From the NCBI RefSeq assembly GCF_006345805.1, contig NW_021831882.1, forward strand, positions 1-34,077: a stretch of 34,077 nt of DNA. Direction: 5' to 3'. Below the pieces are notes generated by a model that saw only the letters and a program-made list of their open reading frames with translations, did no database searches and was not told where the DNA came from. The DNA comes from Octopus sinensis. Taxonomy: Eukaryota. Positions 26,276-26,817 of the stretch are shown one piece after another. The first letter of the stretch is position 1, and each line of letters begins with the position of its first letter. The translations under genes and the position numbers were made by a program.

Positions 26276-26817
26276 AAAGCAGTGAGCTGGCAGAATCGTT
26301 AGTACGTCAGACAAAATGCTTAGCGGACGAAATACCTATTTCTTAACTATCCACAAGGGGCTACACACAGACAGAACAAACAAGGACAGACAAACGGATT
26401 AAGTCGATTATATCGACCCCAGTGCGAAACTGGTACTTAATTTATCAACCCCGAAAGGATGAAAGGCAAAGTCGACCTCGGCGGAATTTGAACTCAGAAC
26501 GTAACGACAGACGAAATACCTATTTCTTTACTACCCACAAGGGGCTAAACACAGAGAGGACAAACAAGGACAGACAAACGGATTAAGTCGATTATATCGA
26601 CACCAGTGCGTAACTGGTACTTATTTACTCGACCCCGAAAGGATGAAAGGCAAAGTCGAACTTGGCGGAATTTGAACTCAGAACGTAAAGACAGACGAAA
26701 TACCTATTTCTTTACTACCCACAAGGGGCTAAATACAGAGAGGACAAACAAGGTAGACGAAATACCGCAAAGCATTTTGCTCGGTGTGATAACGATTCTG
26801 CTAGATCGCTGCCTTAA
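26276..26817 (-). mobile_element. SINE family C multimer: 184 bp tandem units between two inward-facing heads
   Basis: ACGAAATACC recurs at 26327, 26511, 26695 and 26757; plus-strand head at 26276-26326 and minus-strand head at 26817-26757. Confidence 0.92.

What the first reader, a model, noticed from the sequence alone, without database searches (positions are those of the whole stretch)
26276..26817. 184 bp unit array bracketed by two inward-facing tRNA-like heads
Seen: two full 184 bp units plus a 62 bp partial unit on the minus strand; same unit and same junction as at 20805-20989, in the opposite orientation. Each junction is the quasi-palindrome GAAATA-CC-TATTTC (e.g. 26513-26526), so the private tail supplies a substitute 5' arm for the head hairpin. 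The partial unit is consistent with a deletion between two GTCTGTC microhomologies. A plus-strand head (26276-26326) stops exactly where GTATTTCG would begin, giving about 50 bp inverted termini. Inference: independent confirmation of a fixed recombination or processing point; the inverted head may record deletion of a hairpin formed by two inverted SINE bodies, or strand switching during insertion. Convergent Pol III heads could also yield dsRNA.
Basis: partly seen in the sequence, partly recalled or inferred. Interest (0 to 1): 0.7.

Follow-up and report, generated by a model that had tools for sequence, protein, structure and literature searches.

The report
Octopus SINE tandem array, truncated partner
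This is an ordinary pile-up of short retrotransposons (SINEs) in an octopus genome: one copy carries its body repeated in tandem, and it sits next to the stump of an oppositely oriented copy, a layout already described in clams, lizards and plants.

Summary
On the minus strand there is a SINE head, a 62-bp partial unit, two 184-bp units, then a 10-nt unit start joined to an inverted 51-nt head. The same unit and the same junction occur at 20805-20989.

The window is Octopus-type DNA. The repeat is an abundant Octopus SINE: I found 66 copies in about 230 kb.

The 184-bp unit is the SINE minus its first ~50 nt. It starts on the 3' side of the tip of a long hairpin formed by the SINE's 5' region.

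The 20755-21152 copy (head, A-type unit, B-type unit) is flanked by a perfect 14-bp target-site duplication. That composite therefore inserted as one piece. All four junctions read the same (ATAG|GTATTTCGTC). Tandem arrays in other octopod contigs join at other positions. I read this as inheritance from one composite subfamily, not repeated breakage at a hot spot.

The inverted head is best explained as the stump of a convergent SINE left by a central deletion. It ends where inverted homology with the array begins.

The plus-strand head has no B box, so convergent Pol III transcription is unlikely. tRNA detectors do not recognise either head.

Verdict: a new member of a known kind, of low to moderate interest.

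The parts
26034..26042 (+). ATCTTGTGT, left copy of a 9-bp direct repeat that brackets the whole SINE pile-up
   Evidence: This 9-mer occurs only twice in the window on either strand (0.46 expected anywhere). Each copy lies within 1 nt of an outward-facing SINE 5' end.
26044..26269 (+). E3: old full-length B-type SINE copy with an (ATT)n tail
   Evidence: nhmmer hit to model positions 11-219. It is 79% identical to the O. bimaculoides consensus.
26275..26326 (+). Plus-strand SINE head (positions 1-~51). It has an A box at 26288 and is truncated at the hairpin tip
   Evidence: nhmmer hit to model positions 4-51. It is 83% identical to the consensus. A box present, no B box on this strand.
26326..26335 (-). 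10-nt start of a further unit (GTATTTCGTC), joined to the inverted head. G26326 could belong to either side
   Evidence: Read directly from the sequence.
26336..26519 (-). Unit 3, 184 nt: SINE positions ~52 to the A-type tail, with a B box at 26495
   Evidence: It is 96% identical to the consensus over the shared body.
26520..26703 (-). Unit 2, 184 nt, with a B box at 26679
   Evidence: It is 92.4% identical to unit 3.
26704..26765 (-). Partial unit, 62 nt. An internal deletion of about 122 nt removed its B box
   Evidence: Alignment. GTCTGTC direct repeats at unit positions 8 and 129.
26766..26816 (-). Head of the minus-strand array, with an A box at 26803
   Evidence: nhmmer hit to model positions 1-61. 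A box. It is 85% identical to the consensus.
26817..26825 (+). ATCTTGTGT, right copy of the 9-bp direct repeat
20739..20752 (+). AATGTAGAGGCCAT, left target-site duplication of the composite SINE E2
   Evidence: Exactly two copies in the window, none expected by chance.
20755..20804 (+). E2 head
   Evidence: With the next ~45 nt it folds into a long hairpin (-43.2 kcal/mol, z -3.3).
20805..20989 (+). E2 A-type unit, 185 nt: the same unit as in the array
20990..21152 (+). E2 terminal unit: a head-less B-type SINE with its complete tail. It starts at the same GTATTTCG
   Evidence: nhmmer hit to model positions 49-222. Alignment.
21153..21166 (+). AATGTAGAGGCCAT, right target-site duplication of E2
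20385..20605 (+). E1: ordinary single B-type SINE copy, used as the reference monomer

Best explanation
The locus is a stack of copies of one abundant Octopus SINE. The SINE has A and B boxes for RNA polymerase III, a long 5' hairpin, and either an 'A-type' or a 'B-type' 3' part.

The 184-bp unit is an A-type SINE without its first ~50 nt. One subfamily carries this unit repeated behind a single full head: head, then one or more A units, then a terminal unit. That composite is copied by target-primed reverse transcription as one piece. This is shown for the 20755-21152 copy by its single 14-bp target-site duplication.

The tail|GTATTTCG junction was made once and inherited (inferred). The number of units then changed by unequal exchange between units, or by slippage (inferred).

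At 26044-26816 later copies landed in or next to the tail of an older copy, E3. This is the pattern seen in O. bimaculoides stacks. A plus-strand SINE and the minus-strand array then faced each other tail to tail, forming a ~170-bp inverted repeat. That repeat was lost by a central deletion, which left the plus head (1-~51) joined to the first 10 nt of the last minus unit (inferred).

The plus head stops at the unit boundary because inverted homology starts there. No function is implied. In a longer transcript E3 and the array could pair into double-stranded RNA, as any inverted SINE pair can.
For: **Source organism and family.**
- Peptides translated from the unit match proteins named as O. 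bimaculoides and O. sinensis.
- There are 66 SINE hits across the window and the fetched octopus loci.

**The composite moves as one piece.**
- A perfect 14-bp target-site duplication encloses head + A unit + B unit.
- A single A-type SINE in O. bimaculoides has its own 9-bp duplication and a terminal tail ...GAAATAAATAAT.

**The junction looks inherited.**
- It is the same at all four places.
- It is absent from ~190 kb of two other Octopus genomes.
- Other octopod arrays use other junctions.
- Units 2 and 3 differ from each other (92.4%) by about the sum of their own distances from the consensus. They are therefore not recent local copies of each other.

**Insertion into tails.** Three SINEs of increasing age are stacked head to tail at L090 65990-66620.

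**Bracketing repeat and ages.** ATCTTGTGT occurs only twice in the window, at the outer ends of the pile-up. E3 is the most diverged element (79%).

**Hairpin.** There is a 13-bp apical stem with loop UAGC, and the unit starts just 3' of the loop.

**Real sequence, not a chimera.** The inverted arms are only 77% complementary.

**Known architecture.** The same layout is published for clam SINE arrays as TSD1-(SINE)n-TSD1 (PMC11481361) and for squamate SINE-derived satellites (PMC10702118).
Against: - Only two loci carry this junction, both in one window. Descent from one subfamily is inferred, not shown by a genome-wide census.
- The E2 junction joins A to B, while the array junctions join A to A. 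Either a unit exchange or a second junction-forming event is needed to explain both.
- The array's own 3' end and its target-site duplication are missing. Under any order of events, one insertion lacks a visible duplication.
- An independent B-type copy in O. bimaculoides also begins exactly at (C)GGTATTTCG next to an inverted fragment (L092 24405-24639). This hints at some real preference for the hairpin tip.
- The array head is more diverged than its units (9/62 against 11/237 mismatches, Fisher p=0.01). I cannot fully explain this; 3 of the 9 head mismatches are at CpG sites, by my own reading of the sequence.
Confidence: 0.6

Rival explanations
1. The hairpin tip is a true hot spot. SINE RNA is cut in the apical loop, or the reverse transcriptase stops there. 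It then jumps to the end of another SINE RNA, so head-less units are concatenated afresh at each insertion. The same tip is also where DNA breaks gave the truncated plus head.
For: - The unit boundary lies on the 3' side of the UAGC loop of a 13-bp stem.
- Three kinds of joint meet there: head|unit, tail|unit and head|inverted unit.
- An independent O. bimaculoides copy starts at the same base.
- Units 2 and 3 look like independent samples of the consensus.
- The single target-site duplication around E2 would also fit a template jump during one insertion.
Against: - The donor tail always ends at the same ...ATAG. Polymerase III transcripts should not end there: natural A-type tails run on as AAATAAT.
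- Leaving out the window's own units and an assembly-gap artefact, only 3 of about 15 truncated copies start within positions 43-52, where roughly 1.2 are expected. This is my rough count from nhmmer alignment ends, which are imprecise, and it is not significant.
- Other arrays join at positions 17-23.
Confidence: 0.2
2. The inverted joint arose during insertion. A pre-existing plus SINE was nicked at its hairpin tip. Its 3' end TAGCGG paired with CCGCUA, 12 nt into a unit of the array RNA, and primed reverse transcription internally. The rest of the plus SINE was lost as a target deletion.
For: TAGCGG in the head loop is complementary to CCGCTA in the consensus unit start GTATTTCGTCTGCCGCTACG.
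Against: - The predicted joint is GCTTAGCGG+CAGACGAAATACC. The observed joint lacks CAG.
- It needs a target deletion of about 170 bp, because no plus-strand body follows the array.
- It needs a nick at a particular base, with no evidence for one.
Confidence: 0.1
3. Assembly artefact: the units were mis-counted, or the head-to-head joint is a chimeric fold-back read.
For: - Repeats of this kind are hard to assemble.
- A real artefact was seen in O. bimaculoides: sequence duplicated on both sides of a 10-N gap at L090 ~40790.
- No independent assembly of this locus could be fetched.
Against: - The units differ at 14 of 184 positions, and the partial unit is distinct.
- The inverted heads are only 77% complementary, whereas fold-back chimeras are near-perfect palindromes.
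- There are no Ns or abrupt breaks in the sequence.
Confidence: 0.05

Closest known systems
Tandem-like SINE arrays of the TSD1-(SINE)n-TSD1 type in the blood clam Scapharca broughtonii (PMC11481361)
   Same: The first unit has the full head. The middle units lack the head. The last unit has the same head truncation and a complete tail. One target-site duplication surrounds the whole. The 20755-21152 copy matches this exactly. Palindromic SINE arrangements are also reported in that paper.
   Different: The host class and the SINE family differ. Here the first tail is almost complete. The array at 26336-26816 has lost its terminal unit, and I could not show a duplication of its own.
SINE-derived satellites (sSat) of squamate reptiles (PMC10702118)
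   Same: Tandem repeats are made from part of a SINE, with a longer terminal unit that runs to the SINE terminus. Short loci have few, variable units.
   Different: There are only 2-3 units here, no sign of homogenisation (92% between neighbours), and no evidence of long or subtelomeric arrays.
Dimeric or composite SINEs that amplify as one unit (Alu and others; module exchange in mollusc SINEs, PMC4758252)
   Same: A composite of two SINE-derived parts is moved as a single retrotransposon. Module exchange is attributed to template switching or recombination.
   Different: Only one copy bounded by a target-site duplication was seen. Genome-wide amplification of the composite was not shown.
Octopus SINEs OK, OR1 and OR2 of Ohshima and Okada 1994; OR2 is listed as a CORE-SINE (PMC4758252)
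   Same: An Octopus SINE driven by an internal polymerase III promoter. From memory, the body (…TTTCATCCTTTCGGGGTCGATAAATTAAGTACC…) resembles the CORE domain. This is a lead only.
   Different: No reference sequence was available to compare, so identity with OR2 is untested. tRNA models do not recognise the head.
L1 twin-priming inversions
   Same: An inverted retrotransposon fragment lies next to a forward one.
   Different: Twin priming puts the 5' ends in the middle and the tails outside. Here the heads are outside and the 3' parts meet in the middle. An arrangement with the orientation twin priming would give is seen instead at L092 24405-24639.

Membership tests
SINE (non-autonomous, polymerase III type, LINE-mobilised) | Many dispersed copies with defined ends | tested here: met
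   66 nhmmer hits in the window plus O. bimaculoides, O. sinensis and Logan loci.
SINE (non-autonomous, polymerase III type, LINE-mobilised) | Target-site duplications of variable length | tested here: met
   14 bp at E2. From: 9 bp (ATAAGGCCT) at L090 40605-40897 and 10 bp (ACCTTCATTA) at L092 6340-6570.
SINE (non-autonomous, polymerase III type, LINE-mobilised) | Internal A and B boxes | tested here: met
   TGGCAGAATCG / TAGCAGAATCG and GAGTTCAAATTCC. These blocks are among the best conserved in 18 copies. No TTTT run occurs inside the units. This is motif-level evidence only; there is no transcription data.
SINE (non-autonomous, polymerase III type, LINE-mobilised) | Head derived from a tRNA | tested here: inconclusive
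   ARAGORN finds nothing in the window. On the consensus it gives nothing until the threshold is lowered to 70%, and then only an implausible cloverleaf. Rfam gives no tRNA match even at E<=10.
SINE (non-autonomous, polymerase III type, LINE-mobilised) | 3' tail shared with a partner LINE | not tested
   No LINE library was available. The tails end in A/T-rich simple repeats.
Tandem-like SINE array / SINE-derived satellite | Head-to-tail units made from part of a SINE | tested here: met
   Tandem Repeats Finder gives period 184. The units map to SINE positions 49-169 plus the A-type tail.
Tandem-like SINE array / SINE-derived satellite | A terminal unit that extends to the SINE terminus | tested here: met
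   A full head is present at 26766-26816 and at 20755-20804. A full B-type tail is present at 20990-21152.
Tandem-like SINE array / SINE-derived satellite | One target-site duplication around the whole array | tested here: met
   Met for the 20755-21152 copy. For the 26336-26816 array it is inconclusive: the 9-bp repeat brackets E3 plus the array together.
Tandem-like SINE array / SINE-derived satellite | The same unit at many loci, with long homogenised arrays | tested here: not met
   Two loci, both in this window. None in ~190 kb of other Octopus DNA. Neighbouring units are 92% identical. The source genome itself could not be searched.
L1-type twin priming | 5' ends of the two segments meet in the middle and the tail is next to the target-site duplication | tested here: not met
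   Here the heads face outward-in, and the 3' parts meet at 26326.
CORE-SINE superfamily (OR2) | Presence of the ~65-nt CORE domain | not tested
   This rests only on a resemblance recalled from memory. OR2 is listed as a CORE-SINE in PMC4758252.

The most novel reading that the evidence does not exclude
The tip of the SINE's long 5' hairpin is a preferred site where SINE RNA is cut or the reverse transcriptase lets go. Head-less SINE RNAs would then be strung together during a single insertion. If so, this would be a direct route, at the time of retrotransposition, from a dispersed SINE to the seed of a satellite.
Probability: 0.15. Interest if true: 0.55.

Novelty: new member of a known kind. 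Interest (0 to 1): 0.25.

Why it matters
It matters little on its own. It does add a cephalopod example to the growing list of SINE-derived tandem arrays already known from clams, squamates and potato.

It also gives one clean case, with a 14-bp target-site duplication, in which a multi-unit SINE was inserted as a single piece. That bears on how satellites are seeded from dispersed repeats.

The coincidence of the unit boundary with the tip of a long hairpin is a cheap hypothesis to test genome-wide.

Inverted SINE pairs such as E3 and the array are also candidate double-stranded RNA substrates in an animal known for heavy RNA editing. That property is generic to inverted SINE pairs, not special to this locus.

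Tried and rejected
**Searches that led nowhere.**
- I scanned the metagenome, prokaryote-genome and viral collections for the 17-mer junction. There were 84 hits, all of them chance matches with no SINE around them.
- A protein search with the antisense ORF of the unit against the 90% clusters found nothing. A profile search returned only 4 short Logan proteins.
- Rfam over the whole window gave only microRNA-model hits on microsatellites, below the gathering scores. These are not real.
- Exact look-ups of ten window ORFs, to find an independent assembly of the locus, found none in the collection. Look-ups of P0003 and P0005 found no record.
- Literature searches by sequence words, and for the SRA run, gave nothing useful. 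A search on 'SINE' in an octopus genome paper matched only 'sinensis'.

**Analyses that gave no support.**
- RNAalifold on 18 genomic copies did not recover the hairpin. Decayed copies are not expected to covary, so I folded the consensus instead (z is only -1.65).

**Apparent evidence rejected.**
- An apparent second 'restart at the tip' in O. bimaculoides (L090 40671-40897) turned out to be duplicated sequence on both sides of a 10-N assembly gap.

**Models rejected.**
- Twin priming: the orientation is wrong.
- One transcript carrying E3 plus the array: its ends would have to coincide with two SINE 5' ends, and TTTT runs intervene.

Full report
**What is there**

Tandem Repeats Finder reports one long-period array in the window: 26326-26753, period 184, 2.3 copies, 94% matches, no indels. 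I read the region on the minus strand. It consists of:
- a SINE head, 26816->26766;
- a 62-nt partial unit, 26765->26704;
- two full 184-nt units, 26703->26520 and 26519->26336;
- the first 10 nt of another unit, GTATTTCGTC, 26335->26326;
- joined directly to that, the reverse complement of a SINE head. This is a plus-strand head at 26275-26326 that stops at ...GCTTAGCG(G).

The same unit lies at 20805-20989 on the plus strand. It is 88.5-89.6% identical to the array units and is followed by the same joint...ATAG|GTATTTCGTCTG. The two heads pair over 53 nt at 77% complementarity.

**Source and family**

The window has no genes. It is full of microsatellites. One ORF at 13139-13507(-) is 77% identical to a predicted Octopus sinensis protein.

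I searched the antisense reading frame of the unit against the representative protein library. It found 19 short proteins containing the same repeat. The named ones are from O. bimaculoides and O. sinensis.

Through these proteins I fetched 76 kb and 36 kb of O. bimaculoides, 60 kb and 21 kb of O. sinensis, and three short Logan contigs. A profile of the element finds 66 copies in this material plus the window. It is an abundant Octopus SINE.

The SINE has the following features:
- Copies have target-site duplications of 9, 10 and 14 bp.
- It has an A-box-like motif in the head (TGGCAGAATCG) and a B-box-like motif (GAGTTCAAATTCC) about 25 nt into the 'unit'. There are no TTTT runs inside the units.
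- Two 3' versions exist. The A type ends ...GTGGGCAATAAAGAAATAAATAAT. The B type ends ...CCTAGAGTAGAAAAGAATAT.
- ARAGORN and Rfam do not recognise the head as a tRNA. 'tRNA-like' remains a label, not a result.

**What the unit is**

The 184-bp unit is an A-type SINE lacking its first ~50 nt.

The first ~95 nt of the SINE fold into one long hairpin:
- The E2 copy folds at -43.2 kcal/mol, z -3.3.
- The consensus folds at -38.1 kcal/mol, z -1.65.
- The hairpin has a 13-bp apical stem and a UAGC loop.

The unit begins just 3' of that loop. The head is therefore the 5' arm of the hairpin and the unit starts with the 3' arm.

The 'substitute arm' offered by the tail (GAAATA..TATTTC) is weak. The junction regions fold no better than shuffled sequence (z +0.6 to +1.25). 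The window has 37 such palindromes outside (AT)n tracts. The junction at 20989 lacks it.

**How the composite moves**

The copy at 20755-21152 consists of a head, an A-type unit and a head-less B-type unit with a full tail. It is enclosed by a perfect 14-bp duplication, AATGTAGAGGCCAT. That sequence occurs exactly twice in the window, with none expected by chance. The composite was therefore inserted as one piece by target-primed reverse transcription.

This is the TSD1-(SINE)n-TSD1 architecture described for clam SINE arrays: a first unit with the full head, middle units truncated, and a last unit with the same head truncation and a complete tail (PMC11481361). It also resembles the SINE-derived satellites of squamates, which have an extended terminal unit (PMC10702118).

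**Fixed point or common descent?**

All four joints in the window read ...ATAG|GTATTTCGTC. They share the same tail truncation, and the same two bases are missing relative to the head (TAGCGGTATTT). Several observations point to inheritance:
- In ~190 kb of O. bimaculoides and O. sinensis DNA the joint is absent.
- Every A-type tail there is terminal.
- Tandem arrays in other octopod contigs start their units at SINE position ~17-23, so each array has its own joint (L088, L089).
- Full-length SINEs are often stacked head to tail by insertion at tails. At L090 65990-66620 three copies of different ages are stacked this way.

This pattern fits a joint made once in a composite subfamily and then inherited, with the unit number changed by unequal exchange. 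It fits repeated breakage at one site less well.

Units 2 and 3 are 92.4% identical. They are 93% and 96% identical to the consensus. They are thus about as far from each other as the sum of their own ages, so they are not recent local copies of each other.

Two facts keep a hot-spot model alive. One independent O. bimaculoides copy begins exactly at (C)GGTATTTCG next to an inverted SINE fragment (L092 24405-24639). And the joint sits at a hairpin tip.

Among the other truncated copies I count only about 3 of 15 starting within positions 43-52, where roughly 1.2 are expected. This is my own rough count. nhmmer alignment ends are imprecise, and the excess is not significant.

**The inverted head**

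The arrangement is convergent: the 3' parts meet in the middle at 26326. This is the reverse of twin priming.

The plus head ends exactly where its inverted homology with a head-less array unit would begin. Upstream of that point one side is head and the other is tail.

The simplest history is that a plus SINE and the minus array lay tail to tail, forming a ~170-bp inverted repeat. Loss of that repeat's centre left head(1-~51) joined to 10 nt of the last unit.

An alternative is internal priming from TAGCGG on CCGCUA. It predicts a joint that differs from the observed one by 3 nt, and it needs a large target deletion.

**Bracketing repeat**

ATCTTGTGT occurs only twice in the window, at 26034-26042 and 26817-26825. 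One copy lies 1 nt before the 5' end of E3 (26044-26269, plus strand). The other lies immediately after the 5' end of the array.

E3 is the most diverged element (79%). I therefore read the repeat as E3's own target-site duplication, with the later copies having landed in E3's tail. The reverse order cannot be excluded. Either order leaves one insertion without a visible duplication.

**Double-stranded RNA**

The plus head has an A box at 26288 but no B box on its strand. The minus head has an A box at 26803, B boxes at 26679 and 26495, and a TTTT at 26316. Convergent polymerase III transcription is therefore not supported.

Within a longer transcript, E3 and the units could pair. There are 53-69-nt arms at 74-81% complementarity. 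The two heads could also pair. This is generic to inverted SINE pairs.

**Artefact?**

I could not fetch reads or a second assembly. Two things argue against a technical fold-back or a collapsed repeat. The units differ at 14 of 184 positions. The inverted heads are only 77% complementary.

**Verdict**

This is an ordinary, decayed SINE pile-up containing a small SINE-derived tandem array. It is a new (cephalopod) member of a known kind. The hairpin-tip coincidence is worth a genome-wide check but does not by itself show a special mechanism.

Noticed in passing
window 26034-26042 and 26817-26825: A 9-bp direct repeat, ATCTTGTGT, occurs only twice in the window. It brackets the whole E3 + head + array complex. 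Both outer ends of that complex are SINE 5' ends, which a single target-primed insertion cannot produce.
   Followed up: partly
window 193-527(+), 11628-11959(-), partial copy at 7900-8000(-): A second, different SINE family of about 335 bp. Its head looks much more like a tRNA (GGCCCAGTGGTTAGGG...GGTTTCGATTCCC). Two copies, 85% alike, form an inverted pair 11 kb apart.
   Followed up: partly
window 4335-4582, 25588-25769, 32384-32494; L085 3890-4136 and 15335-15529: Another abundant repeat, shared with O. sinensis at 73-81% identity. Similar-looking ORF translations occur at window 22273-22662 and 32816-33136. It was not classified.
   Followed up: no
window 13139-13507(-): A 123-aa ORF with a weak GIY-YIG match below the Pfam cut-off. 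It is 77% identical to an O. sinensis 'uncharacterized protein' whose remainder is microsatellite-derived. It is probably a transposon remnant annotated as a gene.
   Followed up: partly
window 15299-16367(+): Broken reading frames that look like a mariner/Tc1-type transposase (…PPYSPDLDP…). Pfam gives only a weak helix-turn-helix hit.
   Followed up: partly
L090 40671-40897 (O. bimaculoides CM046612.1): A 10-N gap with the same ~50 nt of SINE sequence on both sides. This is an unmerged overlap in the public assembly that mimics an internal duplication.
   Followed up: yes
L090 65990-66620(-) and 4043-4478(+): Stacks of two or three full-length SINEs of clearly different ages, each inserted at the very end of the previous copy's tail.
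   Followed up: partly
L092 24405-24639: Two 5'-truncated SINEs joined 5' to 5', with tails outward. This has the orientation twin priming would give. The forward copy starts exactly at the hairpin tip, (C)GGTATTTCG.
   Followed up: partly
L089 765-1985 and L088 797-1429 (Logan, SRR11869384, species unknown): Old, diverged arrays of three to five SINE-derived units of about 220-245 bp. Their units begin near the A box, not at the hairpin tip.
   Followed up: partly
L092 6365-6511 and L090 66210-66408: SINE copies with internal deletions at or next to the hairpin tip. One loses the 5' arm and is flanked by a 10-bp target-site duplication. The other loses AAATGCTTAGC.
   Followed up: no
window, many sites (e.g. 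1004-1087, 9439-9513): Dozens of Rfam microRNA-model hits fall on (CA)n/(TA)n microsatellites and lie below the gathering scores. They are composition artefacts.
   Followed up: yes
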